Shown piece after piece: positions 6,013 through 62,508 of a stretch of DNA of 64,000 nucleotides (its first letter is position 1; each line of letters begins with the position of its first letter). Source of the DNA: Macrostomum lignano (taxonomy: Eukaryota). Under the pieces are notes generated by a model. The model ran no database searches. It saw only the letters and a list, made by a program, of their open reading frames with translations, and had not been told where the DNA came from. The stretch spans positions 1 through 64,000 of the forward strand of contig NIVC01002878.1 in NCBI GenBank assembly GCA_002269645.1. Direction: 5' to 3'. The position numbers and the translations under genes are program-made.

Positions 6013-6699
6013 AGTGCTGGCGCCCCTGGTGCTGGCGCCCCTGGTGCTGGCGCCCCTGGTGCTGGCGCCCCTGGTGCTGGCGCCCCTGGTGCTGGCGCCC
6101 CTGGTGCTGGCGCCCCTGGTGCTGGCGCCCCTGGTGCTGGCGCCCCTGGTGCTGGCGCCCCTGGTGCTGGCGCCCCTGGTGCTAGCGCCCCTGGTGCTGG
6201 CGCCCCTGGTGCTGGCGCCCCTGGTGCTGGCGCCCCTGGTGCTGGCGCCCCTGGTGCTGGCGCCCCTGGTGCTGGCGCCCTGGTGCTGGCGCCCCTGGTG
6301 CTGGCGCCCCTGGTGCTGGCGCCCTGGTGCTGGCGCCCCTGGTGCTAAAGCCCCTGGTGCTAAAGCCCCTGGTGCTAAAGCCCCTGGTGCTAAAGCCCCT
6401 GGTGCTAAAGCCCCTGGTGCTAAAGCCCCTGGTGCTAAAGCCCCTGGTGCTAAAGCCCCTGGTGCTAAAGCCCCTGGTGCTAAAGCCCCTGGTGCTAAAG
6501 CCCCTGGTGCTAAAGCCCCTGGTGCTAAAGCCCCTGGTGCTAAAGCCCCTGGTGCTAAAGCCCCTGGTGCTAAAGCCCCTGGTGCTAAAGCCCCTGGTGC
6601 TAAAGCCCCTGGTGCTAAAGCCCCTGGTGCTAAAGCCCCTGGTGCTAAAGCCCCTGGTGCTAAAGCCCCTGGTGCTAAAGCCCCTGGTGCTAACCCCCC
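6013..6699 (+). repeat. 15-bp minisatellite: (GGTGCTGGCGCCCCT)n switching at ~6341 to (GGTGCTAAAGCCCCT)n
   Basis: Near-perfect tandem array read directly. Confidence 0.97.
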
Positions 6700-7349: not shown

Positions 7350-8966
<1,617 letters not shown>

Positions 8967-9494: not shown

Positions 9495-9665
9495 GTGGGG
9501 CTGGGGCTCGGTTTTTGCTGGATTTGGTAGATTGTGTGTAGAGTTGGTTGAGTTGCAGGTGGATTAGTAGTTTTGGTCGATGGTTAACCTTAGCAGTTGG
9601 TTTGGTAAATTGGGTAGAGTGGGCTGGTAGGTTCGGCATATTTATTCGAGAAGTGGATTTTGATG

Positions 9666-10089
<424 letters not shown>

Positions 10090-10152: not shown

Positions 10153-13100
10153 TCAAAAAGCACGCTTAGCTGCGCAGTCTCTGATGAAGGTAGCGCCATT
10201 GATCTGATCAGGCGCCCTGGCGTCTTCTGTCAGACAGTCGACGAACCTCCGGGTCCGCGCCTGCCCCCGCCGGAACGGGCCCTGCTGCGTGTACAGCAAG
10301 ACCTCCTGCAGCGGCTCCGGGCAGTAGGACTCGGCGCGAATGACGTGGCCCGCCAGCTTCAGGCGGCGCTGTCGCAGGGTCACGCTGGGAGGGCTCAGCT
10401 TGGCCCGCTGGTAGAGAGCCTGGTTGGTGACGTGTTCGGCGTGACGGTGCACGCTGAAGGCAGCGCGCAGCAGGCTGGAGTGCGCCGCGTCCAGCTGGCG
10501 CTCCAGCACATCCGTCATGGTCCAGGTCTCGGCGTTGTAGAAGAGCACCGTTTCCACCACCGCCTGGAACAGTCTGGTTCTCAGCTGGTCTGGCAGGGCG
10601 TCGCTTTGGAGCACGATGCGCACTGAGCGGAAAGCCGCCCACGCAAGCCCTCTGCGACGCCGCAGGTCCTCCTGGACGCTGGGCACGAGACCACCAAGGT
10701 ACCGGAACTGCTCACATCGGGGGAGCGGTGCTGCCGTTGCGCTGTCCATGCTGGGAAGGCGGATGACCGCTGGCAGATCGGCTGGCACAGTCAGGACCTC
10801 CGTCTTCTTGGCGTTGATCTTAAGGCCAACCTTCGCAGCGGCAGCAGCTAGGCCGTCGAGGAGGCGTTGAGCACCAGCAGCAGTGGATGCCAGCAGGGCG
10901 AGGTCATCAGCATATCCGAGGACTGCCAGCCGCTTCTCCGGGTGCCGGCTGCTCGTTCGCCTGCATAGGATGTAGCCGTCCGAGTTGTCCGGTAGTCCTG
11001 TCCGCAGCACCCAGTCCAAGATGAGGATGAACAGGAAGGGAGCGAGGGTGTCTCCTTGCAGGACTCCGGATGAGGTGGTGAAGAAGTCGGAAAGGCCGTC
11101 AGGTGTGATCACAGCAGCGTGCGTGTCGTGGTAGAGCGCCATCACTGCTGCAATCAGTTTCTCTGGCACGTTGTAGGCTCGGAGAACTAGTGGAATCACG
11201 CCTCGAGCCACCGAGTCGAAAGCCTTCAGGAAGTCGATGAACAGACAGAAAAGGTCCGACTGGCGAATGCGCGATTCCTCGATAATTCTCCGGAGCGCCA
11301 GAATTTGCGTGACTGTACCACGTCGTGGCCGGAACCCATTCTGCTCGTACCGCAGGTAAGGGTCCAGCACTGGCTGCAAGCGCGACAGTAGCAGCTTGTT
11401 GTGCAGCTTGGCGGCACAGGACATCAGGGAGATGCCCCGATGTTCTTCAATCTTGTTGGTGCCCGGCTTCTTGGGGATTCCGACGATATGTGCTCGGGTC
11501 CACTCCGGAGGTGCGACGCCAGTATCGAGAACGTTGTTGATCACCCTGGCGATCTCCTGGGCGACCTTGGGCAGTCTGAGCACCTCGTTGGGAACTTCGT
11601 CGGGACCCGTTGCCTTGCCGCCTGGGATCTTCTTGGCGAGCTGACAAACATCGATTGCGGTCACATGGCCGGTACAGAAATGATGCGGAGGCGGCAGTGG
11701 CGTGTCAGGGGCAGCGCCAGCACATCAGGGAGCGCAGGTGGTGGCGCATTCACTATGCTAGCGAAAAAGTCCCGCAGGCTGTTCTTGCGCTCATCCGGCG
11801 TGTCCCCAACCAGGTTGAGCGCCGTGCGTTGCTTCCTGCCAGTGAGGGTGTTGATGGCAGTCCACACGGTGCCGCTTTTCCTGTCCGGGGCGGCGGAGGT
11901 GACGGCGCGGATGGCCTCGCTCACGGCAGCCAGCTGCTGCTCTTTGTAGACAATGGCGAGGGCCTTTTCCGCCTCGTCTGTTGTGTGCCTGCTCCTCCTG
12001 AGTCGCTGCACTCGATCTTGGGCCTCTCTGATCGCTGGGTCGCTCATCCACACTGGTTGTGAGCGCTGCGGTGGACGCACGAGTGGTAGCGTGCTTTCCG
12101 CCGCGGTGTGGATTGCGTCGCATATGTCACCATACTGAGCGTTGTGGGTGTCGCCCAGCGCGGTGGAGAAGGCGCGAGAGAAGCGGTTCCTAGTTGCTGG
12201 GTTCCGCAGTGCTCTAAAGAAACGCCTCGGTCTTTTCTTCGGTGGTCGGTACAGGGGGTCACGGAGACGCAAGTCACAGAACAGCAACTTATGGTCTGAC
12301 CCCACGGCCAGTGGTCTGACGGTGTCGCAATTCAATGCTCGGCGGCGTTCGCGAGTGCGCAGTAGCACGTGGTCTAACTGCGCTAGCCTGCAAGTCGCGT
12401 TACGGCCGGTTGCATTTCGCCTTCTCCGTTTACAGCCGGTAAAGGTCGCGAGCCGGCTGGCAGGTTTGCGGAAGGTGGTATTTGCGGACACCAGATCGTG
12501 CTGCTCTGTCAGACTCACCAGCGCATCAGTGTTTGGATTCTCGCGTGAAGTCACATAAGGGGCGCTAGCGGATCGACGCATCACCGCATTCAGATCGCCA
12601 AGCACCACCAGAGTGTCTCGCTGCGCGATGGTTTCTAGTTGAGCCGACAGGAGATCGTAGAACCTGCCAGCTTCTTCTGGGTGGGCAGCTGTCGGCGCGT
12701 ACGCGCAGAAGAGGCGCGCGTTGCGGTTACGTAGGCGAATGTCAACCCGCATCAGTCGGGGGCTCAGGGGGAGACAGCGCACGCTTTGTCGCAGCCGAGG
12801 GTTTACAAGGGCACCGACCCCGCCACGTCCTTTCTTGTCCGCGGAGGTGTAGAACAGTGTCCAGCCGCCACCAAGGTCTTCCACTTGCAAGTTGGGTCCG
12901 CTGACGATGGAATGCTCTTGCAACATCAGGATGTCCAAACGCAGATCTTGGGCGAGTTGGGCAACCAATCCTCTTCGCCAGGTTGCCTTCAGAGTGCGGC
13001 AGTTGAAGGTTGCCAATCTAAGCGTGCAGTTTGGTACGGCTGGGGCCCGCTGACATTGGGCCTCATGGTCTCCGGCGCCACCCGGCAGATCCAAATCCTC

Positions 13101-13322
13101 AGTGGACGGGGTGGGCTGGCGGCGCATGTTGGATCCGCGCAGCCGGCCTCTGCGATTCCGTTCACGACGCCTCTCAATCCGACGCCGAACGCTCCGCTTG
13201 CCCCGTCTCACTTTGGTGCTGACTTTTGCAGCCGCAGCCGGGGGGCGCGGCTCACCGAGCCGACCGAGGAGAGCGCAGTCTGATGCAGGTGCTGCTGCTG
13301 CGTCACCAGGAGGCGTCAGCAT
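10153..13322 (-). CDS. RTE endonuclease-reverse transcriptase single ORF, one -1 frameshift in a C-run near 11705
   Basis: APE motifs LATFNCRTL, LMLQEH, LGDLN, LDHVL, SDH; RT motifs GFR, FIDFLKAFDSV, GVLQGDTLAPFLF, YADD, FRYLG; RTE C-terminal RRLKLAGHVIR. The two ORFs join if one C is added in CTGCCCCTGAC. Confidence 0.92.
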
Positions 13323-13460: not shown

Positions 13461-13956
<496 letters not shown>

Positions 13957-14692: not shown

Positions 14693-16710
14693 ATGTACTC
14701 ATTTCTCCGAGTCGCGCAGCGGGGCAAGTCCCGCCGGTGCAAAAAATCCGCCGCGGCAGCCGCAGCCGAAGCCGCCTGTCCCGAGCCGGACGATGCATCG
14801 AAGACCAACGCGAATGCGGCAGACAGCGGTACTACAGCCTCCGCTCCGCATCAACCCCATCATCAGCATCGGAGCGCAGTTGTCGACGGAGTTGCTGGCA
14901 GTTTACGCCGACAAGAATCAAGCTGCGACAGCGGCTGCCAGCGAGTCAGCATCAACGTGGCTGGAGAAATATTCGAAACTCAGCTGAGAACGCTGCGTCG
15001 ATTTCCCGGCACTCTGCTTGGCAACGACCAGAAGCGGCTGCAGTACTGGGACGCCAGTCGAGGACAGTACTTCTTCGACAGGCACCGCCCTTCGTTCGCC
15101 GCGATACTCAACTATTACCAGTCTGGCGGCAGGCTGCGTCGACCAAATGAAGTGCCCGAGGAGGTGTTCTACGAGGAGCTGAGATTCTTTCAACTTGACG
15201 AAGCCGTCATTCGCAGCTTCTTAGTGTCCGAAGGTTACTCGCAGCTCACGGTGCGGCACTGGAGTCAGCCGAGCTGGAGAACCAGCCTGTTCTCTGCGCT
15301 GCACTATCCGAAGACTACCAAGTTTGGCAGGCTGCTGGTGGCGCCCAGCGTGGCCATCATTATCCTGTCAGTGGCGCTGCACTGCCTGCACTCGCAGCCA
15401 GACCCGTGCACCGCGGCTGATGGCACCGGGGAGGATGGCAACAGGAGCTCCGCGGCTTCGACACGGTGAGTGTCTGGTAAAGCTTCTGGGAACACTGGTG
15501 CAACGTCTTCGTCGATATAATCCTACAACTAGCAAAGAGGTAGTTCTGCCTGTTTCCCTGACCCCTGAGCACATGCAAGCGCGCAGAACGCTTTCATACG
15601 CTCGCTCACAAAGGGTGTGCAGCAGCTCAGACTTTCTAATCGTCAAATATGTACACTCACTGAGCCTTGTCCTGATTGGGTGAGAATTGGACGACAATCT
15701 GGCCACGCAATCTGAAAATGCTATCTCATAAAAAAACACGATCTCAGCTTTTGTGGCTGAGGTGCGTCGTACTGTTTGGCCCTTCAGATTTTCCTTTAGA
15801 GACGGAATACCTTTTAAAAGGATTTAAAACTATAGAGTATGTATGGTTGGATCTATCAATTCAACCCGAAAGGGAAATCAGCAAGTATGTTATTTTTACC
15901 TGCGGAACTTGCCACCCCTGACGGGCCCATCACTGAAAAAAGCAAAAACATGCTCATTCGACCGCCTTCTGCAGCTACCTGCCGCTGGTATTCGGTCCCA
16001 AGCAAATGTCAATCAGCTCCAACAGTCTATGGTTTACCAGACTCGAATTCGCTTGCGTCTCTTGGTTCGCTCTGGAGTTCTGCATCAAAGTGGCCGTCTG
16101 CCCGCTGCCCCGAACTCACCTGGTCCGTTCCGCGGCTGTTTGGCTTGACGCAATCAGCTTTACACCCTACTTCATCTCAGTTGCCATGGAAACGTTGGGA
16201 AGATTCTGCGCCGACAGCGGCCTGATGCGAGCGTTGCACTTTAGCCATGTGTTGAGAATCTTCAAACTGTACCGCTACGTGACCGGGATGCAAATTCTGG
16301 GCAGGACGCTCAGGATGAGCATCCGGGAGCTCACCATGTTTCTGTTCTTCGTCGGCGTCAGCGTGGTTTTGTTCGCTTCGGCGATTCACCAAGCGGAAGG
16401 AGCGGTGCAGCGGCAGTTCCAGAGCATCCCGCACGCGTTCTGGTGGGCGGTGATCAGCTTGTGCACCGTCGGGTATGGAGACGCAGTGCCGCGAACCCTG
16501 GTTGGCAAGCTGATTGGTTCAGCGTGCGTTGTAGCCGGGGTCATGACGGTGGCCCTGCCAGTTCCTGTCATCGTCACGAACTTCAACAGCGTCTACAGGC
16601 GGACGGTGCTGTCAAAACGGGTGCAAAATCGACCAGAGTTGCTGCACAAAAAACTGCTACATCCGGTGAAATGCTGTGCAATCAGGTCGTCTTCGGACAT
16701 TGTTGAGTAG
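14693..16710 (+). CDS. Shaker: Shaker/Kv1-family voltage-gated potassium channel; exons 14693-15465 and 15975-16710
   Basis: T1 domain RVSINVAGEIFET...YFFDRHRPSFAAILNYYQSGGRLRRP; pore SIPHAFWWAVISLCTVGYGD; S6 ALPVPVIVTNF; GT-AG intron 15466-15974 keeps the frame (CG|C = Arg). Confidence 0.95.
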
Positions 16711-18148: not shown

Positions 18149-21100
18149 TCATTCAACAACATTGGGCATTAGCGGTTCCAGCACAGCCCTGGCTGGTCCG
18201 TCTGTACTCAAATCCGGACTGCTATCGGACAGGTCGAGCACTTCGGGCAGCCTCCAGGCCTGGCTCTGGTCCCGCTCTCGACAGGACTCCACGCTCAGGC
18301 CTGGCTGAGACATGGCCGCCGTGTGCCGCAGGGTTAGGCACTGGCCAGTGGCCGGGTGGTAAATCTGCCTGTCCCCGGTGTCCTCGTACCGCCAGCTCTG
18401 GTATTTGCCGTAGCCTCCATAGCCTTGACAGGCCACGAGGGTCAGGGCGCGACCGTTGTAGTGCAAGCAGTCTGTTTCACGGATCAGCTCGCCGTGCTCC
18501 GACAGAGTCCAGACTTGATTGCCGCCCTGTAGAGTAATAGTAGTGTGGTTAGCGTTTTTAATGATATATTTATTATTTTCATTTAATATTAATTTTTATG
18601 TTTCCTGCAATTGATTGATTGATTGACATAAATGAGCAGGGGAAAGAAAAGGACCCGGATACGGATGGAGAAGACCCGGATAGGGATGGAAAGGACCCGG
18701 ATAGGGATGGAAAGGACCCGGATATGAATGCATGGAGAGGATCTTGATATAGAAGAAAATGATCTAGATATGAATAGGATATCTAGATATGGAAGCACGG
18801 GGCACTAATAAGAGACCCAATACGGCACTATAACACTAATACTAGACCCAACGATGTTGTAATAAAGCCACAATATATTTTTATGTTGATATCAGGGATG
18901 TTAGATAGGAAATATAGATACTGACAACTCATTTTTAGTGTAGCGGGAAAGAAAAAGATCGAGAGCAGTGATTAGATTCACATTCCAATACCTTGTTGTG
19001 GCACCGCTGCAGGCTGACTTCAGCGCCTCCTTGTCGCCTGATTCCGTCAAGGCACCAGGCATCTCCGCCAACTAGGCGGAAGGACTGAATGACCCCGATT
19101 CGCGTGCTGTTGCCCCATCTCAGCTGCTCAGGGTAGACGTGCTCCAGGTACCAGCGAAACGAATGGCAGTTGAGCCGTTTTCGGAGAGCCATACGATCAG
19201 AAACATCGCCATAATCGCCCAGCAGGTTGTTAAACTGGCGATAATAAATATGCTTGAAATTATCCATCCACACTTCGGCCATTCGAATAGTGTTCCGCTT
19301 GAGAACGTCGCCGGACCCTTCGCCCCAGGAGTAGGGGCTTCGGGTGCGAAACACGTGACCGATGATGGAGCAGGGCAGAATCTCGATGCGACCGCCGCAC
19401 ATCCAGATGCGGAAACTGCAAGGAATTTTTGTTTGGATACTTTTGTTTGAATGTGAGTCAGGCACAACACTCGAGCAACTTTTAAAGGGTGCACAGTGGT
19501 TTTGACTTTCTCATCGTTTGGTTGGCTGGTAGGTACACACGCTCTCAGGATCCTCATACAGTAGGATCAGCTGGGATGAGATTTGACGAGTGATTCGGGT
19601 TAAAATTGGCTGGATAAAAATGTGGATGTACTTTTAAAAAATCATTATCTCTGTATACTAATAGATTTTCATTAGATAAGTTACGAATACGTACATCTAT
19701 GCTCACCTGATTTCAAGATTCTCCGCGCCCCAAATCTCCATGCCTTCGTCGTATCGACCAAGCTCGTCAAAGTAGCTCCTATCGATGCTGAAAAGTCCAC
19801 CGGCCATGGTTGGCGTCGGCACCGGCTGAGCCAGGCTGCTGAGATTCTGTCGGATTCTCTGCGGCATCGACTGCCAGCTGAAGCTCATGGTGTTCCAGCG
19901 GAATCCACCAACAACCATGCGCTCGTTGGCGACGTGGAAGAAGCCGAAGTTATCTTCGTTGATAACGTCGATGTGGGGCACGGCGACATTTCGTCGATCG
20001 TCTCGGATGCGTTGGAGCAGCGGCTCCAGCCAGCCGTCGGTGCACTCGATGTGCGAGTCGAGGAAGGTCAGCGTCTGCCCGGTGGCCACAGACGCGCCAA
20101 CCAATCTTGATCGAATTAAACCTTCGCGTTTCTTGTTGCGCAACAACCGTACGCGACCGAGTTTTGCCAGGTAATCTTCAAGGGGTCGGCCTAGGTGAGG
20201 TCGATTAGAGAAGTCGTCTACTAGAATGATCTCGTGCAGCAAAGCAGGCGGTGCTCTGTCCAGCACAGAGTGGATGCTGCGCAGAAGGACGCTCCAGGCC
20301 TCGTTGTGCATGCACATGATGACGCTGGTGTTTGGCAGCTGCTCAATCGAGTACTTTCTGTTTCGGCAGTCCTTTGGACGGTAATCCTGATAATTATAAC
20401 AAACGCTAAGTTTTTTTGTCATTTAAGAAGCTTTCTCAGAATCTATCTGCATTATCATGTTTCGCTAAAAAACTATTGCCATAAAGGTGCTACAAATCGG
20501 TCAAGTATTCAGTAATAACACCCAGAAAAGTGCTCAGTCTAGTTAATTGGCCCTAGCTAGAAAAATACTTCATCTATCGATGCTCAAAAAAGCTACTCTG
20601 ACAAAAAATCGAAGGTAAAAATTACCTGCAACCTGCGTTGCACACTGATTAGTTCGCTGGCGTATTCGTTGAACGCATTCTCCTTCCAGCCTCGCTCAAA
20701 TCGTTCGAGTTGGCGCTGATCCAGCAGCTGCTTGTTGACTACCACGCTGGCGCCGAGCTCGCCGGGACCTGTCGGGGTCGGCAACTTGCTGGTGACTTGC
20801 TGGGTTGTCGTCGGCGTTGTTTCAGTCGACGTCTTGCTTGTTTTTGCAGTTACGGACGAAGTTTTGGTCGTTCCTGTGGTTGTCTTTGCTGTCGCTGTCG
20901 TCGATTCCTCCGTTGTTTCTTCGGCTGTTGTTGTCTCAGTGGCAGCCTTCCTCAAATCTGCCAGACGTTGCCTGAATTGCTCATTTTTACGTTTCAACTT
21001 AGCCATTCGGTTACGGATGTCTGCATCGATTGCCGAAGCAACATCGTATCTGCTCTTCTTAGTTAAGCGGGATTTATCTGCTGAATCGGCATTCCACAGC

Positions 21101-21339
21101 TCGGCTCTGACGCGCTCTTTATCTAGTCGAATCGCCTCCCGAATCGAGCCCAAGACCGAGTCGTCGACATCGTCTTTGCTGCCGTCCAGTAGTCTGTCGC
21201 CGCGATCTTCAACCGGTTGATCACTGCCACCGTTGTGAGAGCCGATCAAGAAGAGAGCGACGGCGAACCACAACAGTGGAATGAGCAGCAGTACGCGATA
21301 GTTGACTAGGCGCCTCAGGGACCAGACCACCAGGGACAT
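18149..21339 (-). CDS. GALNT: Polypeptide N-acetylgalactosaminyltransferase; exons 21339-20626, 20386-19707, 19415-18992, 18526-18149 (~731 aa)
   Basis: Type II TM anchor, Thr-rich stem, [22 protein letters not shown], DxH motif [30 protein letters not shown], ricin lectin repeats (GGNQVW, QSW, QAW). All introns are GT-AG with consistent phases. Confidence 0.96.
18643..18725. repeat. ~21-bp intronic tandem repeat (GGAAAGGACCCGGATAGGGAT)
   Basis: About 4 units inside GALNT intron 3. Confidence 0.8.
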
Positions 21340-22962
21340 GAGGACTCAGAAATCAGGATGCAATCGGCAGTTTAAAAATCTAATAAAGACACGCGCAGAC
21401 TAACAAAGTACTGTGCAACATTTATGCGCTGTTGTTTTACTGCAGTAACTCAGTATTTACTGCTTTACAAGCTTCCGTAGTTCCTCCCCCGAAGTTTTTG
21501 AGGACTATGAGGCGATCGGATTTATTTTTCTCTCCAGATCTTTTCTCCCATTCTTATGGAGGATTTGAATAGCAATTCTATACTATATTGCCAGCTGTTG
21601 TTTTTGCGGCGTAGGGATTGTGGGTCAATTCTCGGGATTAAATACGCGCGCGCGCACTCGCGAATTACCTGAAGGGGGCAGAAACAAAGCCAGTCACGTA
21701 GTATAGAGCTGACTGCAGAAGCAACAGCTTGTGCGAAGCGGCGGCATTGCGGCACGCTTAGGCTTGGCGTCCTCTGGCAAGATCGTCTTCCACAATGCGC
21801 AAAATAAGACTAAGACTTTATTGTGCAAACTGTAACTTTATAGTAACTGGTCTTTGGGAAAATAACTATGAATTTGATTCACTGTGTCGTACTCACTTAT
21901 AAATGTTGAATGAGAGTTGTTGGTAGAGACGCTTGAGAATCACGTGATCGGAAACTGGATTAGAAGAGAGAAATACGCTTTGTCAGTCAAATCTCTATTC
22001 AGTCTGGAGTGAACGGCGTGCAGCCTTGATGTGAGCGAGCGCTATAGCTGAAGGCCGGTCTGTCGGTCTACTAAAGCTGCGTCCGTGACCCCAACCTCTT
22101 TCCAACCATCTTTCCCTCCGTCCCGCTCTCATTGAATCGGTCGCCGCCTCTCTGTTCACTAATTACAAATGCACACTGAAGAGCCGCGTCACGAAAACGG
22201 TGTGCGGTTGTGACGTTTTCCTGTCACACATTAGCGTATAATTGACACAGAGATGACGTTTAGTCTAGAATTGCGGTCGCAGCACAATTATGGCTGATAA
22301 TAAACGTGCCAGCAATTGATTTTAGGAAAATATCAATCAGCTGACTAAAATGGTAATCTTTTTTATAAGCTAGATTTTTTCTATTGCATTGTATGAAGTG
22401 AGTGGATTTAAAAGAAAGTAAAGTAATGAAAAACGCATACTATGTACGACTTAAAATTAATCTTTGATTTAAATTTCTTTTAATATTGTGCAGTTTCATG
22501 TTTAAACACGATTGAGCAATAATGTGATTGTTTACGTCTTAAAAATATTGTTTAAATTCATCCATAAAGATACTAGTAAAACAAACTAATCATTCTGGCC
22601 GCTGCGCATTTATTAAAATAATTTACCTAAAGAATGCAACAAGCGGTTCTATAATTATACTGATATCAACCTATACTACTAATAAAAAGTAGAGTTAGTC
22701 ACCCGGTTTAAGTTTGGAAAGGAGAAGACACCCATCGTACGAGCTAGTAGTACGTCTGGTGTAACGTCGTCTATTCTTGGACGCACAAGCTGCTCTTTGA
22801 CAAACAATCAAACCCCAGCGAGTGCATGTGGTAGTCGCGGACATTCAGGCTGCACTTGTTGAACACAACAATTACACATGCTCTGAATCAAATTGACAAT
22901 TCAAGGTTTTCTATCTTTCGAGTTCAATGGGTTTCACTCTTAGCGCAACTGAACACTTCACT

Positions 22963-23648
22963 ACCAGGGGCTTTAGCACCAGGGGCTTTAGCACCAGGGG
23001 CTTTAGCACCAGGGGTTTTAGCACCAGGGGCTTTAGCACCAGGGGCTTTAGCACCAGGGGCTTTAGCACCAGGGGCTTTAGCACCAGGGGCTTTACCACC
23101 AGGGGCTTTAGCACCAGGGGCTTTAGCACCAGGGGCTTTAGCACCAGGGGCTTTAGCACCAGGGGCTTTAGCACCAGGGGCGCCAGCACCAGGGGTTTTA
23201 GCACCAGGGGTTTTAGCACCAGGGGCGCCAGCACCAGGGGCGCCAGCACCAGGGGCGCCAGCACCAGGGGCGCCAGCACCAGGGGCGCCAGCACCAGGGG
23301 CGCCAGCACCAGGGGCGCCAGCACCAGGGGCGCCAGCACCAGGGGCGCCAGCACCAGGGGCGCCAGCACCAGGGGCGCCAGCACCAGGGGCGCCAGCACC
23401 AGGGGCGCCAGCACCAGGGGCGCCAGCACCAGGGGCGCCAGCACCAGGGGCGCCAGCACCAGGGGCGCCAGCACCAGGGGCGCCAGCACCAGGGGCGCCA
23501 GCACCAGGGGCGCCAGCACCAGGGGCGCCAGCACCAGGGGCGCCAGCACCAGGGGCGCCAGCACCAGGGGCGCCAGCACCAGGGGCGCCAGCACCAGGGG
23601 CGCCAGCACCAGGGGCGCCAGCACCAGGGGCGCCAGCACCAGGGGCGC
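22963..23648 (-). repeat. 15-bp minisatellite, same family as 6013-6699, opposite orientation (left part of an LTR-split array)
   Basis: AGCACCAGGGGCTTT then AGCACCAGGGGCGCC units. Confidence 0.97.
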
Positions 23649-24665
23649 TGATGTGTTCCTTATTACCTGCCTTCGATAATCAAGGAACAATCACTTCTAG
23701 CTCTGTAGCTAGGCAACCCAGTAAATCAAATGAAGGTATGTATTACCTTGAGTCCTGTCTCGGAGAGCTCTTCCGTGTTCTGTAGTTCTCGGACTTCCTT
23801 TGACCCTCGAACTTCGTTAGACGTCTATGTTCGTAACCAGGTCCGCGTTCCTTTACGTCCACTGAAGTCGTTTCCGGCCGGTATCTGTAGTGCGGACCAA
23901 TGGGAAGCTTCCAAATCAACAATGGGTACCCTGCGCCAAACTGCGGTTTAACATAAGCCTACTCCTTCTAGCAGTGCCTCTATGCACTCTAGGTATAGCT
24001 CCGGAAACCTTTGATAGTCTTCTAAGATCTATCAGAGGCAGTCCTTCTGGAGACTGCAACCAGTAGAGTCTAAACAGACTCAGGAGTCTCAACAGACTCA
24101 AACTAAACTCCAACGAGACGTCTCAAAACACAGGCGCAAATGAGTAAGGCTTACCGCAAGAACTCGACGAGTCTTCTGTAGGAAGTCCTGTAGTGGCTTC
24201 CTCTTCGGAGCTCTTCTCCTTCCGGAGGAATTGTGGCTCCGGGTCCGTTCCGGACCACTTGTATTTATAGACGTTCAGACCTCTCTCGAGGTCGTACATC
24301 ACTGTCTTCGCAAATGTCAAAGGGTCAAGATTCGGTGGCTGTCAAGCATGACAGGGTAGAAAGTTGCGCAACTAGTCTACTGTAAAAGCGCATGATTGGT
24401 TACCGTAGCTGGTAGACTTTGATTGGTTCATCCGGGTGCAACCCAAATGATGACTTGAAGGTGGGGTTTGAATTGACAGTTGTTGGTCGCACGTGATTGG
24501 GTGATTTCTAAAATTAGCATGCTCGAGGTCTCTCTCTTCCTATTGGTTAATTCGAATATATGTATGGTTCAGCGCATATCCTTATACATGCTCCTCAAAT
24601 TACTACTATTTAAGTAGTACGTTAACAATTTTAAATAACTTTTCTGGGAGATATAATACTCTACA
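23649..24665 (-). mobile_element. Solo LTR (1017 bp) with 4-bp TSD GCGC, related to the LTR at 45100-45951
   Basis: Termini TGATGT...CTACA on the + strand; GCGC at 23645-23648 and 24666-24669; 23649-24270 aligns by eye with 45100-45739; TATAAATA on the - strand at 24262-24269. Confidence 0.92.
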
Positions 24666-25481
24666 GCGCCAGCACCAGGGGCGCCAGCACCAGGGGCGCC
24701 AGCACCAGGGGCTTTAGCACCAGGGGCGCCAGCACCAGGGGCGCCAGCACCAGGGGCGCCAGCACCAGGGGCGCCAGCACCAGGGGCGCCAGCACCAGGG
24801 GCGCCAGCACCAGGGGCGCCAGCACCAGGGGCGCCAGCACCAGGGGCGCCAGCACCAGGGGCGCCAGCACCAGGGGCGCCAGCACCAGGGGCGCCAGCAC
24901 CAGGGGCGCCAGCACCAGGGGCGCCAGCACCAGGGGCGCCAGCACCAGGGGCGCCAGCACCAGGGGCGCCAGCACCAGGGGCGCCAGCACCAGGGGCGCC
25001 AGCACCAGGGGCGCCAGCACCAGGGGCGCCAGCACCAGGGGCGCCAGCACCAGGGGCGCCAGCACCAGGGGCGCCAGCACCAGGGGCGCCAGCACCAGGG
25101 GCGCCAGCACCAGGGGCGCCAGCACCAGGGGCGCCAGCACCAGGGGCGCCAGCACCAGGGGCGCCAGCACCAGGGGCGCCAGCACCAGGGGCGCCAGCAC
25201 CAGGGGCGCCAGCACCAGGGGCGCCAGCACCAGGGGCGCCAGCACCAGGGGCGCCAGCACCAGGGGCGCCAGCACCAGGGGCGCCAGCACCAGGGGCGCC
25301 AGCACCAGGGGCGCCAGCACCAGGGGCGCCAGCACCAGGGGCGCCAGCACCAGGGGCGCCAACACCAGGGGCGCCAGCACCAGGGGCGCCAGCACCAGGG
25401 GCGCCAGCACCAGGGGCGCCAGCACCAGGGGCGCCAGCACCAGGGGCACCAGCGCCAGAGGCGCCAGCAACAGGGGCGGCA
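24666..25481 (-). repeat. 15-bp minisatellite (right part of the LTR-split array)
   Basis: (AGCACCAGGGGCGCC)n resumes in phase after the TSD. Confidence 0.97.
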
Positions 25482-26414
25482 ACAGTATAATGTCTACAGT
25501 GCAAGCCCCTTTTGATAAAAACAGTGTGTAACCGGCTATTCAATATCGACAAGTCCAAGTGTGATTGCAAAGCAAATAACCGTGATAATAAGACATTAAG
25601 CACCAGTAGCTAGATCTGGTTTGTTGAAGAGTTTCAATTAGAAAGATTTTTGTTTACCACCTGAAAGAGACTGTTTACTGTCTCTTTCGCGGTAGTCGGA
25701 CGGTAAGATTCCCGTTAACCCATAAGAGGTTGCCCATGTTTCACCGTCCTCCCGCAGCTATGCAGCAAACGATTACATAATCGGGTTAGATAGCGCGAAG
25801 CACTCAGCATAATGTCGGAGAATTTTTGCTCAATTGATAGATAACGAAATTTTCACGTTAGAGCTCGGCTTGCAAGTTGACGTGTTAAGTTGAAAATTTG
25901 GTTGTTTGTTTTAATCGACAGATTTAACTGATTATTTATAAAAATGATTTCTAGGAAATTCTATCAGAAAGTCTTAACATTTCGATGCCAGGATTAATTA
26001 GATAATTTGCTGTTTTGCTAGCAATAACTGCTGCTATCAGTTTATTTATGTTTATAAAATATTCAATAAGATTAAACATAAGAGGAGAATTTCTTCAACA
26101 ATAGTTAGTCTTGGTTTAATTTCAAACTGAAAAAAACTTTATAAATATTAGGGCAAATTATTAAATATATATAATTATATAAATTATATAAATATAATTA
26201 GTATATATATATTCATACATGTACACTTTTAGGGCACTGCGGTTAACTAGATATAATTCGACTTGTGTAGATATGTTTGTCATACTTATAAGTAGTGTCT
26301 TTGGTTTTAGGCTCTGTTAGGTTTTTTATAGTTGCTTTTGGACTTCAAATTGTCTTAACATATCGAGTGTAAATTTCTGCGATCATCAAAATTTGACTGA
26401 CTTAGAAGTCGAAT

Positions 26415-39646: not shown

Positions 39647-40781
39647 TTAAAATTTTTTTTTGACTAGATGCTTGGCGATCGGGTACGGCTTGCACTGAAT
39701 AGGTTCCGTGTGCGGTAGAAGCTTGATCTCTTGCTTGATGTCTTTAGCTCGTCCGATGTCGTAGTCATGGTGGCAGAAGGCGTCGTTGTACTTCCACAAC
39801 AGTTGTCGAACTTTCTTCTTTTGCTGTTCCGTAATCGGGCTGTCGTCCAAGTTTATCTTCTTTTGGAATTCCTCTTCCGTTAGTCGTGGAGTTGTTTGTT
39901 CGATCAGCATTACCGACGCTTGGGTGTTGAGATGACCAATACACATTCCTTGTCGAAGGTGAACCATTTCCGTGTTTGAATTGAATATTTGTACGGGCAG
40001 TTGTTTGTCTTTTGCTACCAGTACTAGAGCTGTAGGCATCATAACTTGATGTTTAGCCATGACTCTTCTGTGCGGATCAAATATCATTGCTTCATCTGCC
40101 GCGCTAGCTGGTTGCTTTCGCTCTGACCCAGCATGCGCTTTCAGGCTGGATGATGACGTCTTGCTGCAGAGTTACTTTCGGTAGTACGCGAATCTGGTTG
40201 ATCAGCGGTTGCTCCACGGTGTCGATCCTGAACGTTTGCTTGTTGAAGTCGAAGGTCAAAGGTAGTCGAAGCTGCTTGAACGTGTCGATTCCAACGATGA
40301 CGTCTTGGTTTGGTAGTCTGTCGATGATGTACGTCGGGACCGTCAGCTGTTTATTAGCAATTTTCAAGTCGATATCTGCTTTTCCTAGGATGTTGAGTGA
40401 ATGTCCTCCTGCTCCTGCAACTGCGATTGCTGCTGGTCGTACCGCGAGTCGTAGCTTGTTGCATAATTGTTGCGAGATGACTGTGATCGAGCTGCCTGAA
40501 TCTAGCAGTGCTCGACATGGCAAGTTGTTGACAATGACCTGAGCCATTGCGGCTGCATTCTCGGTGCTGTTGGTGTTGTCGGAATCGATGGATACATTCG
40601 CGTTGATAGTGTCGGCTGTCCTTGAGTTTCTCGACGTGCATCCTCTGTCAATTCCAAGTTGTTGTCTTCTTCCCTTGGTGTCTTCTGCATGATGGCGTTC
40701 ACTGTTTGTTTCGCTGTAGGACAAGTGTTGCTGAAGCATCGTACTATCGACGAGATGATAAAAATCGCCGTAACTATCCAT
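39647..40781 (-). pseudogene. pol 5' part: aspartic protease and start of RT, frameshift near 40105, truncated near 39650
   Basis: VIVNNLPCRALLDSGSSITVIS and DVIVGIDTF (protease); KKVRQLLWKYNDAF...IKQEIKL...PIQCKPYPI (Gypsy pre-RT region). Confidence 0.88.
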
Positions 40782-42862
40782 ACCACACAGGCGCTGTAGA
40801 AGATGAATCCTTGATATAGACTGCCTCTTCCGTTAAGCAGCTCCAAGAAGCTGTTTGTCCAAAACAATTGGATGGCGTTGTCCATAGACACTAGGACCGG
40901 GAAACTGCTTGTGCCTGTTCCCTTATTCTTTCGTGTGAAGAGTTGACGAATCATCTTTCGTTGAGTGATGAACGCTTGCAAGAAGTCGTTGATAGTCCAT
41001 CCAGGTGTTATCTCATCGAGTTGGATATCGGCGAATGGCGTGTACTTCGTTCTGTTGAACCGTATCTTCAGATCGTCCATATCGTACGTTTCATCGACAA
41101 TCACTTCTGGTTCTGTGATGTTCGCTGTCGTTCCTGTCGTTTTAATGACGTGTAGTGCATCGTCCAGTTGATAGTAGTTTGCTGCAGTGGTGCAAGGTCT
41201 TGGTATGGCGGTGCCAACGATGATGTTGTGTACCGTGTCCAAGAATCCTTGTATCCTTTTGCCTTCGTAGAATGCCTCAATTCTAGGCTTGTCGTAGCAA
41301 GTTGTTGAAGTGTTCGACGGCAAGATGTTGAAGTGCTGTATCGGCGTGCACTTGTATATCAGGAGATGTCCATATATCGGAATTGCCAGAACATCTCTCA
41401 TTCCAGTGATCTTGCGAAATGTCATCGTAGGGTTAACATAGTAGTTCTGTCTTGCGTAGTTCAAGTTGATTGCGTGCATTTTGCAAGTTAGCTGAACCAG
41501 TGATCGATGTAAGTGGTTTAGCTGGTTATGCAGGTTGTGATCCAGCGCAGTGATCTTTGCTGACAGTAGTCGGTTCGACACCAATCGTGGACGTTCTATG
41601 TCGCGTCGTTGCCTTTCTTGTTGTTGATACGTCCCGTTTATGATCGCCAGGAAGGTTCGTTTGTCGTCCTCCTTTACATAGACTGGTATTTCTTGCTCCG
41701 AAATGAATAGCGTCTTGTCCGTATCCTTACATTTGAGTTCCTGTTCGACCGGCTTCTTTTGAAACGTCAAGGCCAAGTCTCCTGCTTTTGTCAAAAACGT
41801 ATTCGACAGTAGTCCTCCTTCCACTGTGTGATACTTTTGAAGCTTGCAGTCAATTTCCGGCTCCACTTTCCATGCGAAAAAATATTGTCGTGACTTGTAC
41901 GGTTCCTCATAGTGGGAGTGTGCTCTGTGCACAATCTGCCATCGATTGTCTTGATGATATGTTGGACTCAGTGGTAGACTGTGTAGTTCTTCCTTCCGTA
42001 GAGTTGGTGTTGGACACCATCCTTCACTGTATCGACATTCGCTTAGTTGCAGCTGTAACGATTCCATTTTCTCGTACAGATTGTAGTAGAATGGTACATT
42101 CCTGATCAAGTAGCTGTTTCATGCCATATATTCTTTCCATTTTCCGAAGAAGTGAATGTATCGACCGTTGGCTGAATTCTTTGTTCTGAACAGCTGTGCG
42201 TTGCCGACCTTCTCATCTGGTTCCAGTTCACCATCCTTTGAAAATAGTGTTTGGTTCCATTGTAGGCATTCCGCGTGTGACACATGTAGCTCATGTTGTC
42301 GAAATCGGATCCAGTTCCATTGTCCGCGCCAAACTTTTTCCACTAGGTGCTTGTCTCTGAAGCACACTATTCCGTGTTGTCGGTGCTTCTTGATGTTAGC
42401 CTTGTAGAGATCGAGTGTAATCTTCTTTGGCTTCGTCTGGTTTGTCTTGAAGTAGCTGCATTTGATGTCGGTTGGTATCTTGTAGATCATCGGTTGGATA
42501 TGCGCATCCGTTAAACAAATCATTGGCTTTTCCGTTGCCGTTGCTTTGGCGACTACTGCTATCAGTAGTATCACGATGATCCAGAATAGCCAGTTTTTCC
42601 ACTTCTTGGACTTTGCCGTTGTCTTTGCTGGCATTGGCCGCGATTGCCATTCGTTATTTTCCATGTCCGCATCATATCCTTCCGGTTGTTCCATTGGCTG
42701 TTTCAGGCGGAAGGCTTCTGATTTGCTTTGCTCTTTGGTTATTTCAGTATTTTCGTCTGCAGCTTCTTCCGATGTTTCGGTTGTTTCGCTCCATTGCGTT
42801 TGGTATCTTTTCTCTGTCTTGTAGTCGACCGTTTGAATGTAGGCTTGGCCATTTCGCTTGTA
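40502..42862 (-). CDS. Envelope-like type I glycoprotein (class III / gB-like fusogen), in frame with gag, one internal TGA at 42119-42121
   Basis: Internal signal WLFWIIVILLIAVVAKA (~42592-42544); Cys-rich ectodomain with several N-x-S/T sequons; furin site RQRR (41614-41603); TM segment FIFYSACVVWIVTAIFIISSIV (~40800-40740). Confidence 0.85.
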
Positions 42863-58476: not shown

Positions 58477-59631
58477 GTGCAAGATTGACTCCCAATAAAT
58501 AATTGGTGCAAGATTGACTTTCAATCAATAATTGGTGCAAGATTGACTCCCAATCAATAATTGGTGCAAGATTGACTCCCAATAAATAATTGGTGCAAGA
58601 TTGACTTTCAATCAATAATTGGTGCAAGATTGACTCCCGATCAATAATTGGTGCAAGATTGACTCCCAATCAATAATTGGTGCAAGATTGACTCCCAATC
58701 AATAATTGGTGCAAGATTGACTCCCAATCAATAATTGGTGCGAGATTGACTCCCAATAAACAATTGGTGCAAGATTGACTTTCAATCAATAATTGGTGCA
58801 AGATTGACTCCCAATCAATAATTGTTGCAAGATTGACTCCCAATCAATAATTGGTGCAAGATTGACTCCCAATCAATAATTGGTGCAAGATTGACTCCCA
58901 ATCAATAATTGGTGCAAGATTGATTCCTAATCAATAATTGGTGCAAGATTGATTCCCAATCAATAATTGGTGCAAGATTGACTCCCAATCAATAATTGGT
59001 GCAAGATTGATTCCCAATCAATAATTGGTGCAAGATGGACTCCTAATCAATAATTGGTGCAAGATGGACTCCTAATCAATAATTGGTGCAAGATTGACTC
59101 CCAATCAATAATTGGTGCAAGATTGACTCCCAATCAATAATTGGTGCAAGATTGACTCCCAATCAATAATTGGTGCGAGATTGACTCCCAATAAACAATT
59201 GGTGCAAGATTGACTTTCAATCAATAATTGGTGCAAGATTGATTCCCAATCAATAATTGGTGCAAGATTGATTCCCAATCAATAATTGGTGCAAGATTGA
59301 TTCCCAATCAATAATTGGTGCAAGATTGATTCCCAATCAATAATTGGTGCAAGATGGACTCCCAATCAATAATTGGTGCAAGATTGATTCCCAATCAATA
59401 ATTGGTGCAAGATTGATTCCCAATCAATAATTGGTGCAAGATTGATTCCCAATCAATAATTGGTGCAAGGTTGATTCCCAATCAATAATTGGTGCAAGAT
59501 GGACTCCTAATCAATAATTGGTGCAAGATTGATTCCCAATCAATAATTGGTGCAAGATTGATTCCCAATCAATAATTGGTGCAAGATTGATTCCCAATCA
59601 ATAATTGGTGCAAGATTGATTCCCAATCAAT
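58477..59631. repeat. 29-bp minisatellite (AATCAATAATTGGTGCAAGATTGACTCCC), ~40 units
   Basis: Period 29 measured directly; no spacers. Confidence 0.97.
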
Positions 59632-60169
59632 ATTTTGGAATTCGGTATTTAAAACAGTTGAATTATTACGAATAATAAATATGATTTACGAGCGTAGCTA
59701 CTGCATTAAATCCAGTTTTTTAAAATAATTAATTTACACCAAAAAAATAACTAAGCGGACAGTTAAAACAAAAACTAAACGCACCAAAATAACAGTGAGC
59801 ACATACACAAAAGAGTTCTCTTATACAATTTACTAATTAGCAATAAGAATAACAACATGCTTAATTAACATCTAATTATCCTTGTTCTTCACATGTATAA
59901 AGTATTGCATTTTGTAAGCTTTTGAATTGCAATGTCAAGAAATGGAACATTAATAAAATGGTGACGTCATGCAGACAGGAGGGGGTAAGGAGAATTAATG
60001 CAAGCAAATCAATATTTCAGTAATTAATGAATGAGTTCTCCCCATGACAACTTCAGGCTACTAAATAACAATAATTTTTACACGCATTTACACACAATGA
60101 GACACTCAGATATCGTAGTGCGCTAAAATCAGAAACAATTTTATACAGTGGTACATTCTACTTATTGAT

Positions 60170-62155: not shown

Positions 62156-62224
<69 letters not shown>

Positions 62225-62275
62225 AACAGACAGACAGACAGACAGACACAGACAGACAGAGACAGAGACAGGCAC

Positions 62276-62321
<46 letters not shown>

Positions 62322-62390
62322 GCACAGACAGACAGTCAGACACACAGACAGACACACAGACAGACACACAGACAGTCAGTCAGTCAGACA

Positions 62391-62424
<34 letters not shown>

Positions 62425-62463
62425 AAGACAGACAGACAGACAGACAGAGACAGAGACAGGCAC

Positions 62464-62508
<45 letters not shown>

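What the first reader, a model, noticed from the sequence alone, without database searches (positions are those of the whole stretch)
16222..16278. Kv1 channel with histidines at S4 gating positions R2 and R3
Seen: S4 reads LMRALHFSHVLRIFKLYRY against Shaker ILRVIRLVRVFRIFKLSRH, so R2 and R3 are His (CAC 16237, CAT 16246, each one transition from CGY). S2/S3 countercharges, the F gating-charge transfer residue, TVGYGD and PVP are retained and the ORF is intact. Knowledge: engineered Shaker R365H and R368H transport protons through the voltage sensor, and a Kv3 channel of the flatworm Notoplana conducts naturally through a gating pore. Inference: a natural pH-tuned or proton-carrying Kv1, or a regulatory subunit.
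Basis: partly seen in the sequence, partly recalled or inferred. Interest (0 to 1): 0.75.

Follow-up and report, generated by a model that had tools for sequence, protein, structure and literature searches.

The report
Flatworm Kv1 channel with histidine sensor
An intact potassium-channel gene of the flatworm Macrostomum lignano has histidines at four normally invariant charged positions of its voltage sensor, which makes it a natural counterpart of laboratory mutants that carry protons, though its function has not been tested.

Summary
Codons CAC 16237 and CAT 16246 encode His at S4 positions R2 and R3 (Kv1.2 R297/R300, Shaker R365/R368). They lie in a two-exon, 502-aa Shaker/Kv1-family gene (14693-15465 and 15975-16710) that is nearly identical to a Macrostomum lignano UniProt entry.

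All six database copies from this species carry the same S4. All 116 non-Macrostomum relatives among the 120 best hits, and the closest M. lignano paralogue, have Arg at both sites.

E183 is the salt-bridge partner of R3. F180 is His too (H230). The charge-network pattern is HHEED-RHHRKR, against EEEED-xRRRK(R/K) in every relative.

T1, the S1-pore interface, the filter TVGYGD and the gate PVPVIV are all kept. Compared with its sister paralogue, extra change is confined to the voltage sensor (26 versus 11 lineage-specific changes; 7 versus 9 in T1 and 8 versus 9 in the pore).

Best reading: a working Kv1 alpha subunit with a remodelled, pH-titratable (possibly metal-sensitive) sensor that may shuttle protons. 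A regulatory-only subunit is disfavoured.

No orthologues from other species, expression data or structure model could be obtained, so function remains inference.

The parts
14693..15465 (+). Exon 1: ATG, N-terminal region, T1 domain, S1 and the start of the S1-S2 loop (residues 1-257 plus 2 nt of codon 258).
   Evidence: ORF and splice reconstruction. tblastn of P0001 is 100% identical over 14693-15466.
15466..15974 (+). Intron of 509 bp, with donor GTGAGT and acceptor TCTGCAG.
   Evidence: The spliced product is near-identical to database protein P0001.
15975..16710 (+). Exon 2: rest of the S1-S2 loop, S2-S6, the C-terminus and stop codon TAG.
14945..15214 (+). T1 tetramerisation domain (residues 85-174), Kv1 type.
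   Evidence: Pfam BTB_2, 4.4e-25. It aligns with Kv1.1-1.3 T1 crystal structures at 1e-33 to 1e-30. There are no Cys residues that could form the Zn motif of Kv2-4 T1 domains (direct reading of the sequence; the motif itself is from my own knowledge).
15302..15304 (+). H204 (CAC), at the position of Kv1.2 E154, the S0/S1 member of the internal negative cluster.
   Evidence: MAFFT column is E in 116/116 relatives. The role of E154 is described in PMC2766034 and PMC8469797.
15326..15400 (+). S1 helix (residues 212-236), ending HCLHSQP where relatives have FCLETLP.
15380..15391 (+). H230-C231-L232-H233. H230 replaces Kv1.2 F180. H233 replaces E183, the external countercharge that salt-bridges R3.
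   Evidence: F and E are each 116/116 in relatives. The R3-E183 salt bridge is reported in PMC3361024 and PMC2650729.
16039..16047 (+). R280-L281-E282. A lineage-specific Arg sits two residues before the retained external S2 acid (Kv1.2 E226).
   Evidence: The column is I/L/V/M in relatives and is never Arg.
16066..16077 (+). Charge-transfer centre in S2: F289 (Kv1.2 F233) and E292 (E236), both retained.
16147..16149 (+). D316 (Kv1.2 D259, the S3 countercharge), retained.
16222..16278 (+). S4, LMRALHFSHVLRIFKLYRY: R1 is R343, R2 is H346, R3 is H349, R4 is R352, K5 is K355, R6 is R358.
16237..16239 (+). H346 (CAC) at gating-charge position R2.
   Evidence: Arg in 116/116 relatives.
16246..16248 (+). 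H349 (CAT) at gating-charge position R3.
   Evidence: Arg in 116/116 relatives.
16465..16482 (+). Selectivity filter TVGYGD (residues 422-427).
16558..16575 (+). S6 hinge and activation gate PVPVIV (residues 453-458), an exact match to the consensus.
   Evidence: The criterion comes from PMC6279357.

Best explanation
This is a real, intact Shaker/Kv1-family alpha-subunit gene of Macrostomum lignano. Its assembly domain, S1-pore anchor, K+ filter and S6 gate are conserved. Its voltage-sensor charge network has been rebuilt with histidines: R2 and R3 on S4, the S1 acid that pairs with R3 (Kv1.2 E183), the S0/S1 acid of the internal cluster (E154), and F180.

Most likely it still forms a voltage-gated K+ channel. 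R1, R4 and K5 would be its only fixed gating charges, and H346 and H349 would be titratable ones. The expected result is a reduced, shallower voltage dependence whose midpoint and steepness shift with pH, and possibly with Zn2+-type metals bridging the facing HxxH motifs of S1 and S4.

As a by-product or as a function, the sensor should move protons down a pH gradient when it cycles, as Shaker R365H and R368H do. It may also leak in an intermediate state, because two adjacent Arg are missing.

Shown: the sequence, family membership, rarity of the substitutions, presence in all copies, and sensor-specific acceleration. Inferred: everything about currents, pH and metals.
For: - **Family and integrity.** Pfam BTB_2 plus Ion_trans. 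Kv1.2 scores 4e-97, far ahead of Kv3, Kv4 and Kv2. Splicing is canonical GT-AG, and the product differs at 2 residues from a M. lignano UniProt protein.
- **Rarity.** R2 and R3 are Arg in 117/117 other proteins. The network pattern HHEED-RHHRKR is unique; all 116 relatives show EEEED-xRRRK(R/K).
- **Not an error.** Six M. lignano copies share the same S4.
- **Correlated change at a known contact.** R3 salt-bridges E183 in activated Kv1.2 (PMC3361024; PMC2650729). Both are His here.
- **Bias toward His.** 5 of the 25 deviations from near-invariant columns are to His (binomial P about 0.003-0.015). Core His content is 2.6-2.8%, against a median of 1.0% in relatives. Three of the five (E to H twice, F to H once) need two nucleotide changes each.
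- **Constraint elsewhere.** 97 of 122 near-invariant columns are kept. S1-pore interface residues C231, I409, P410 and F413 are kept. T184 is Ser, the only substitution that preserved function in Shaker (T248S; PMC2650729). PVPVIV is exact.
- **Sensor-specific acceleration.** Lineage-specific changes against sister paralogue P0004 are 7 versus 9 in T1, 8 versus 9 in the pore and 26 versus 11 in the sensor (binomial P = 0.02).
- **Mechanistic precedent.** Shaker R365H and R368H transport protons (PMC2233663). Two adjacent S4 substitutions such as R2/R3 give non-proton omega currents in Shaker (PMC3372090).
Against: - There are no functional data of any kind.
- No orthologue from another species was found, so conservation of the His residues and dN/dS are unknown.
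- No transcript evidence was found.
- The protein is the most divergent of the 120 compared: 25 deviations from near-invariant columns, against a median of 0 and a maximum of 14. This also fits relaxed constraint on the sensor.
- Some database copies have frameshift-like model defects.
- The sensor-versus-other-domains contrast is only borderline by Fisher test (P = 0.05).
- At the alkaline pH expected of a marine habitat (my own knowledge), the His would be mostly neutral, so the sensor might simply be weak.
- No structure model could be made.
Confidence: 0.5

Rival explanations
1. It is a regulatory ('silent') Kv1 subunit. It cannot form homotetramers, and it tunes the voltage dependence of heteromers formed with canonical M. 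lignano Shaker subunits.
For: Silent subunits have evolved repeatedly, including within Kv1 in cnidarians, and they evolve fast (PMC3519636). This protein is unusually divergent. Its T1 is of Kv1 type, so co-assembly is plausible.
Against: 42 of 43 known regulatory subunits have atypical S6 gate sequences, while homotetramer-competent subunits keep PVPVIV (PMC6279357). This protein has the exact PVPVIV. T1 and the pore evolve no faster than in the sister paralogue.
Confidence: 0.2
2. The voltage sensor is under relaxed constraint. The gene is a redundant duplicate in a repeat-rich genome (known from my own knowledge to be recently duplicated). Its sensor is decaying, or has become nearly voltage-independent, and the histidines have no specific role.
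For: It has the highest number of deviations from near-invariant columns (25/122). Acceleration is concentrated in S1-S4. Several near-identical copies exist, some with broken-looking gene models. A LINE-like element and long microsatellites lie within about 1.4 kb upstream.
Against: The ORF is intact. T1, pore, gate and S1-pore interface are conserved despite about 50% divergence from the nearest paralogue. All copies share the His residues, so the changes predate the copy divergence. The substitutions are non-randomly His, they hit both sides of a known salt bridge, and three needed two nucleotide steps. R1, R4, K5, R6, F233, E236 and D259 are all kept.
Confidence: 0.2
3. It is a metal-regulated sensor. 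The facing HxxH motifs of S1 (H230, H233) and S4 (H346, H349), with C231 and E282 nearby, would bind Zn2+, Cu2+ or Ni2+ and lock or bias S4 in one state.
For: Position 233 contacts an S4 gating-charge position in the activated state (PMC3361024, PMC2650729). Two HxxH motifs lie at otherwise invariant positions. Further His lie on the predicted external face at H396 and H411.
Against: This rests purely on geometry inferred from homology. No model or coordinates were available. It is not exclusive of the pH reading.
Confidence: 0.1
4. The genome encodes His, but the mRNA is recoded to Arg by A-to-I editing (CAY read as CGY). The mature channel would then have a canonical S4, or a regulated mixture of the two.
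For: Both His codons are one A-to-G change from Arg. His-to-Arg is a possible ADAR recoding, and Kv1 mRNAs are heavily edited in some invertebrates (my own knowledge).
Against: No long inverted repeat pairs with the S4 codons; the best is a 17-nt, 76% match 1.9 kb away. The local RNA fold is not unusually stable (z = -0.76). Editing would not explain the E154, E183 and F180 changes to His.
Confidence: 0.03

Closest known systems
Engineered Shaker R365H and R368H (histidine-scanning mutants; Starace & Bezanilla 2001, PMC2233663)
   Same: His sits at exactly the R2 and R3 positions of a Kv1-family S4, with R1, R4, K5, the S2 and S3 acids and the Phe of the charge-transfer centre all present.
   Different: Here the substitutions are natural, both are present at once, and two acidic partners (E154 and E183 equivalents) and F180 are also His. 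Proton transport has not been measured.
N.at-Kv3.2 of the flatworm Notoplana atomata (natural omega current; PMC2443804)
   Same: A platyhelminth Shaker-superfamily channel with a natural His in S4 and a second non-basic gating-charge position.
   Different: It belongs to a different subfamily (Kv3). Its His is at R1 and a Gly is at R3, and its S2 acid is shortened to Asp. Here R1 is Arg and the S2 Glu is kept, so a resting-state omega pore of that type is not predicted.
Shaker 'double gap' mutants (two adjacent S4 Arg replaced; Gamal El-Din et al. 2010, as summarised in PMC3372090)
   Same: Two neighbouring gating charges (R2/R3) are missing, the arrangement reported to open a cation leak in an intermediate closed state.
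   Different: Here the gap is filled by imidazoles, and the change is natural. I did not read the primary paper and rely only on reviews, so I cannot say which residues the engineered mutants used.
Natural voltage-sensor proton pathways: Hv1, human TPTE (H207 in S4), zebrafish HCNL1 (PMC10651576)
   Same: A natural substitution at an S4 charge position, His in TPTE, is linked to proton flux through the sensor.
   Different: Hv1 and TPTE have no pore domain, and the HCNL1 pore is dead. This protein keeps a complete, canonical K+ pore.
Regulatory Kv subunits (Kv5, Kv6, Kv8, Kv9; Nematostella NvShakR; PMC6279357, PMC3519636)
   Same: A fast-evolving, lineage-specific paralogue inside a Shaker-like subfamily.
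   Different: The S6 gate PVPVIV is intact, whereas it is altered in 42 of 43 regulatory subunits.
Rat Kv1.2 (closest solved structure, e.g. 2A79, 3LUT, 8VC3)
   Same: Same T1-S1-S6 architecture. The match is 4e-97 over residues 80-469, with about 40% identity.
   Different: The charge network is HHEED-RHHRKR rather than EEEED-RRRRKR. The S3-S4 linker is shorter, there is an extra Arg next to E226, and the N- and C-termini are unrelated.

Membership tests
Shaker/Kv1 subfamily of voltage-gated K+ channels | N-terminal T1 (BTB_2) domain of Kv1 type, without the Zn-binding Cys/His motif of Kv2-4 | tested here: met
   Pfam BTB_2, 4.4e-25. It matches Kv1.1-1.3 T1 crystal structures at 1e-33 to 1e-30. 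There are no Cys in residues 85-182 (direct reading of the sequence). The Zn-motif criterion is from my own knowledge.
Shaker/Kv1 subfamily of voltage-gated K+ channels | Closer in sequence to Kv1 than to Kv2, Kv3 or Kv4 | tested here: met
   Kv1.2 4e-97, Kv1.3 3e-93 and Shaker 2e-87, against Kv3.1 6e-58, Kv4.2 2e-52 and Kv2.1 4e-52. Nearly all named hits among the 120 best are Kv1/Shaker.
Shaker/Kv1 subfamily of voltage-gated K+ channels | Six transmembrane segments, the TVGYGD filter and the PVP hinge | tested here: met
   Ion_trans 1.2e-36. TVGYGD at 422-427 and PVPVIV at 453-458.
Shaker/Kv1 subfamily of voltage-gated K+ channels | S4 with Arg at R2, R3 and R4, Lys at K5, and acidic partners at E183, E226, E236 and D259 | tested here: not met
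   R2, R3 and E183 (plus E154) are His. R4, K5, R6, E226, E236 and D259 are kept. This is a deviation in functional residues and does not argue against common descent.
Regulatory ('silent') Kv subunits | Atypical substitutions in the S6 gate sequence PVPVIV (seen in 42 of 43 known regulatory subunits) | tested here: not met
   The gate is exactly PVPVIV. The criterion is from PMC6279357.
Regulatory ('silent') Kv subunits | T1 self-incompatibility, with no homomeric current | not testable with these tools
   This needs expression experiments. PMC6279357 reports no consistent T1 sequence signature.
Histidine-tagged voltage-sensor proton transporters (as Shaker R365H and R368H) | His at an S4 position that crosses the focused field between inner and outer crevices | tested here: met
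   H346 and H349 align with Shaker R365 and R368. Those positions traverse the field in Shaker (PMC2233663).
Histidine-tagged voltage-sensor proton transporters (as Shaker R365H and R368H) | Steady, bell-shaped, pH-gradient-driven current and pH-titratable gating charge | not testable with these tools
   Requires electrophysiology.
Natural gating-pore (omega) channels of the N.at-Kv3.2 type | A small or non-basic residue at R1 and Gly at R3, with a shortened S2 acid that opens a resting-state pore | tested here: not met
   R1 is Arg (R343), R3 is His rather than Gly, and the S2 acid is Glu (E282). The criteria are from PMC2443804.
Hv1-type voltage-gated proton channels | A voltage-sensor domain alone, with no S5-S6 pore | tested here: not met
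   A complete pore domain is present.

The most novel reading that the evidence does not exclude
This is a natural K+ channel whose voltage sensor also carries protons. H346 and H349 on S4, with H233 and H204 replacing their acidic partners, would form a relay. That relay would shuttle or conduct H+ across the gating septum in a voltage-dependent way, or be clamped by a metal ion. The same protein would then couple membrane potential, pH and K+ flux. This is the natural occurrence that Starace and Bezanilla raised as conceivable in 2001.
Probability: 0.2. Interest if true: 0.85.

Novelty: new variant of a known kind. Interest (0 to 1): 0.6.

Why it matters
Histidine replacement of the S4 arginines was a classic experiment showing that gating charges cross a focused electric field. 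Its authors raised the possibility that such proton-carrying sensors might occur naturally (PMC2233663).

The natural sensor pathways listed in a 2023 review (Hv1, TPTE, HCNL1 and N.at-Kv3.2; PMC10651576) either lack a working K+ pore or use a different position. This gene offers a ready-made natural test case inside an otherwise canonical Kv1 channel.

The case comes with a correlated change of the salt-bridge partners. That bears on how charge networks co-evolve, and on how pH or metal sensitivity can be built into a voltage sensor.

It is directly testable by routine oocyte electrophysiology, and by RNAi or in situ hybridisation in Macrostomum lignano, a tractable flatworm model. If the histidines turn out to be inert, the gene still shows how much of the charge network a Kv1 sensor can lose while the rest of the channel stays under constraint.

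Tried and rejected
1. **Orthologue search, full length.** The search returned only M. lignano copies above 50% identity.
2. **Orthologue search, 43-aa S4 segment.** Against 1.84 billion representatives it gave 5 hits, none with His at R2 or R3. The query was too short for a real survey.
3. **Orthologue search, sensor only.** The search returned one unrelated hit and failed even to recover P0001, so I treat it as uninformative.
4. **Transcript or other genomic copies.** Exact look-ups of P0001 and of the exon-2 ORF were not on record. No dN/dS and no RNA evidence were therefore possible.
5. **Structure prediction.** All three-dimensional statements rest on alignment to Kv1.2 and on published structures.
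6. **Second Kv copy or alternative S4 exon in the window.** tblastn finds only the two exons.
7. **A-to-I editing of His to Arg.** No complementary sequence and no unusually stable local fold were found.
8. **Sequencing error.** Rejected, because six copies agree.
9. **General His-rich composition.** Partly true: core His is 2.6-2.8%, against 1.0% in relatives. But the excess sits at invariant network positions.
10. **First regex survey of S4.** It anchored in the wrong register and was replaced by a proper alignment.
Full report
**1. What is in the sequence**

Window 16222-16278 (+) reads LMRALHFSHVLRIFKLYRY. CAC at 16237 and CAT at 16246 encode the two histidines.

The segment is part of a two-exon gene:
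- Exon 1 runs from 14693 to 15465 and starts at the ATG.
- The intron is 509 bp, with donor GTGAGT and acceptor ending CAG at 15974.
- Exon 2 runs from 15975 to 16710 and ends with TAG.

The spliced 502-aa product differs at two residues from UniProt A0A1I8GGE2 of the free-living flatworm Macrostomum lignano (P0001). This fixes both the organism and the gene model. tblastn finds no second Kv copy and no alternative S4 exon in the window.

**2. Family**

Pfam finds a BTB_2 (T1) domain (4.4e-25) and Ion_trans (1.2e-36). Against solved structures the best matches are:
- Kv1.2 at 4e-97
- Kv1.3 at 3e-93
- Shaker at 2e-87
- Kv3.1 at 6e-58
- Kv4.2 and Kv2.1 at about 1e-52

It is therefore a Kv1/Shaker-family alpha subunit.

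The phmmer alignment to Kv1.2 and a MAFFT alignment of the 120 best database hits agree on the S4 register: R343 is R1, H346 is R2 (Kv1.2 R297), H349 is R3 (R300), R352 is R4, K355 is K5 and R358 is R6.

**3. Is it more than chance or error?**

Among the 120 best hits, R2 and R3 are Arg in all 117 proteins that are not copies of this gene. R1 is variable: it is S, I, A, V, N or Q in 36 of them.

The same S4 is present in six separately predicted M. lignano copies: P0001, P0002, P0003, P0121 and two in the fused model P0122. A base-calling error is therefore excluded.

The closest paralogue is P0004, also from M. lignano and about 50% identical. Its S4 reads FLNLLRFLRVFRIFKFYKY, with R1 as Asn and R2 and R3 as Arg.

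**4.

I listed the columns that are at least 95% conserved in the 116 non-Macrostomum relatives. This protein deviates at 25 of 122 such columns. Five of the 25 deviations are to histidine. Besides R2 and R3 they are:
- H204, in place of Kv1.2 E154
- H230, in place of F180
- H233, in place of E183

E183 and E226 form the external negative cluster (PMC9545881). E154, E236 and D259 form the internal one (PMC2766034). In the refined activated Kv1.2 structure, R3 is salt-bridged to E183 (PMC3361024). In Shaker, E247W (the E183 equivalent) shifts V50 by more than 50 mV (PMC2650729).

Both partners of a known salt bridge are therefore now histidines.

Written as E154-E183-E226-E236-D259 followed by R1-R6, the network is HHEED-RHHRKR in this gene. 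It is EEEED-xRRRK(R/K) in every one of the 116 relatives.

Several further points fit a directed change:
- Five His among 25 deviations is more than expected (binomial P about 0.003-0.015).
- The conserved core has 2.6-2.8% His, against a median of 1.0% in relatives.
- E to H and F to H each need two nucleotide changes, so three of the five His were not single-step events.
- A lineage-specific Arg (R280) sits two residues before the retained external Glu of S2.
- Two more His (H396 at the outer end of S5 and H411 at the start of the pore helix, where relatives usually have Asp) lie on the predicted external face.

**5. Is the rest of the channel under constraint?**

Yes, as far as sequence can show:
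- 97 of 122 near-invariant columns are kept.
- The S1-pore interface that MacKinnon's group showed to be essential is kept. C231, I409, P410 and F413 are unchanged. T184 is replaced by Ser, the only substitution at Shaker T248 that preserved function, whereas T248V, A and W gave no current (PMC2650729).
- The S6 hinge and gate is exactly PVPVIV.

In a neighbour-joining tree the protein is sister to P0004. A relative-rate count against the consensus of the other sequences gives the lineage-specific changes below.

| Region | This gene | P0004 |
|---|---|---|
| T1 | 7 | 9 |
| S4-S5 linker to S6 | 8 | 9 |
| S1-S4 (sensor) | 26 | 11 |

For the sensor alone the binomial P is 0.02. Fisher's test of the sensor against the other two regions gives P = 0.05.

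The acceleration is therefore specific to the voltage sensor. That does not fit a decaying pseudogene. It does fit either adaptive remodelling or relaxed constraint on the sensor alone.

**6. How it most likely works (inference)**

R1, R4 and K5 are the only fixed charges that can cross the field. H346 and H349 are titratable. The channel should therefore have reduced gating valence, with a voltage dependence that moves with pH.

The lost positive charges (R2, R3) are matched by lost negative partners (E154, E183), and by a new Arg next to E226. This looks like a charge-balanced rebuild rather than random loss.

Three published results set the expectations:
- Shaker R365H and R368H each move fully across the field and transport one proton per sensor cycle down a pH gradient, giving a bell-shaped steady current (PMC2233663).
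- Reviews report that in Shaker two adjacent substitutions such as R2/R3 are what is needed for a non-proton omega current in an intermediate closed state (PMC3372090; PMC10651576).
- The known natural sensor currents are Hv1, human TPTE (His 207 in S4), HCNL1 and N.at-Kv3.2 (PMC10651576).

The two facing HxxH motifs are HCLH in S1 and HFSH in S4. They also suggest a metal site or a His-His proton relay.

None of this can be tested with the tools at hand. I put about 0.5 on 'functional Kv1 subunit with a pH- or metal-titratable sensor' and about 0.2 on physiologically meaningful proton flux.

**7. Rivals**

- **Regulatory-only subunit (0.2).** It is plausible from the fast evolution and from the cnidarian Kv1 precedent (PMC3519636). 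However, 42 of 43 known regulatory subunits have a degenerate S6 gate (PMC6279357), and this one does not.
- **Relaxed constraint or a dying duplicate (0.2).** This is supported by the divergence, by broken-looking models of some copies and by a LINE-like element and microsatellites just upstream. It is opposed by the intact ORF, by domain-specific rather than uniform acceleration, by the shared His in all copies and by the non-random His pattern.
- **His-to-Arg recoding by A-to-I editing (0.03).** No duplex partner and no unusual fold were found.
- **Sequencing error.** Excluded, as in section 3.

**8. Comparison with the known**

It works most like the engineered Shaker R365H and R368H channels, and perhaps like the R2/R3 'double gap' mutants. 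By descent it is a member of the Kv1 family, but it fails the family's usual charge-network signature.

It is not of the N.at-Kv3.2 type, which has His at R1, Gly at R3 and a shortened S2 acid (PMC2443804). It is not an Hv1-like protein either.

My literature searches found no description of this gene, or of a natural Kv1-4 channel with His at R2 and R3. The searches cover open-access text only.

**9. Limits**

- No orthologues from other species were found.
- No transcripts and no other genomic copies as DNA were found.
- No structure model could be made.
- The rarity statement rests on 116 relatives, not on an exhaustive survey.

**10. Verdict**

The functional reading is plausible, has precedent and is directly testable, but it is unproven. 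I rate it a new variant of a known kind, with interest 0.6.

Noticed in passing
window 14693-14746: The N-terminus MYSFLRVAQRGKSRRCKK has a short hydrophobic start followed by a cluster of seven basic residues. This is the general layout of N-type inactivation 'ball' peptides. It is followed by an Ala run and a His/Gln-rich stretch (HQPHHQH).
   Followed up: no
window 15440-15448: There is an N-X-S sequon (N250-R-S) in the S1-S2 loop, at the place where many relatives have N-G-T and where Kv1 channels are usually N-glycosylated (my own knowledge). This is consistent with a surface-expressed protein.
   Followed up: no
window 16387-16389 and 16432-16434: Two further His lie on the predicted external face: H396 at the outer end of S5 (aligned with a Tyr in Kv1.2, AVYFAE) and H411 in SIPHAFWW, where relatives usually have Asp.
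   Followed up: partly
window 10153-13322 (-): Two long ORFs carry an endonuclease/exonuclease/phosphatase domain and a reverse transcriptase domain, so this is a LINE-like retrotransposon. Its 5' side lies about 1.4 kb upstream of the channel's start codon.
   Followed up: partly
window 7350-8966, 9662-10089, 13461-13955, 62155-62748: Very long tetranucleotide microsatellites: (AGAT)n of 1.6 kb, (GATA)n and (ATAG)n flanking the LINE-like element, and a (CAGA)n array near the window's end. They explain the strong GC and AT skew seen at 8-10 kb.
   Followed up: no
window 18149-21339 (-): This is a polypeptide GalNAc-transferase-like gene: a GT2 domain at 19703-20422, and ORFs at 18149-18466 and 18935-19465 whose sequence lies in the ricin-B-lectin part of database model P0003. 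It is convergent with the channel gene. P0003 wrongly fuses the two genes.
   Followed up: partly
window 6022-6693, 22963-23648, 24666-25478: 15-bp minisatellites of 45-54 copies (for example GCCCCTGGTGCTAAA) lie inside long ORFs. They would encode Gly/Pro/Ala-rich pentapeptide repeats. Pfam finds no match for the two ORFs I scanned (22856-23785 and 24569-25603).
   Followed up: no
window 40502-44398 (-): Two large ORFs have weak, sub-threshold Pfam matches: a zinc knuckle (zf-CCHC) and a viral fusion glycoprotein family. This may be a retroelement with an env-like gene. It was not analysed further.
   Followed up: no
P0002, P0003, P0121, P0122 (database copies of this gene): Several M. lignano copies have models that skip S3 or part of T1. 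Some switch frame just after the PEL codons (about window 16642), which gives a different C-terminus (…AAQKTATSGEMLCNQVV…). These are either assembly indels or real differences between copies.
   Followed up: partly
window 58477-59632: A 29-bp tandem repeat of about 40 copies at 94% identity. Its significance is unknown.
   Followed up: no
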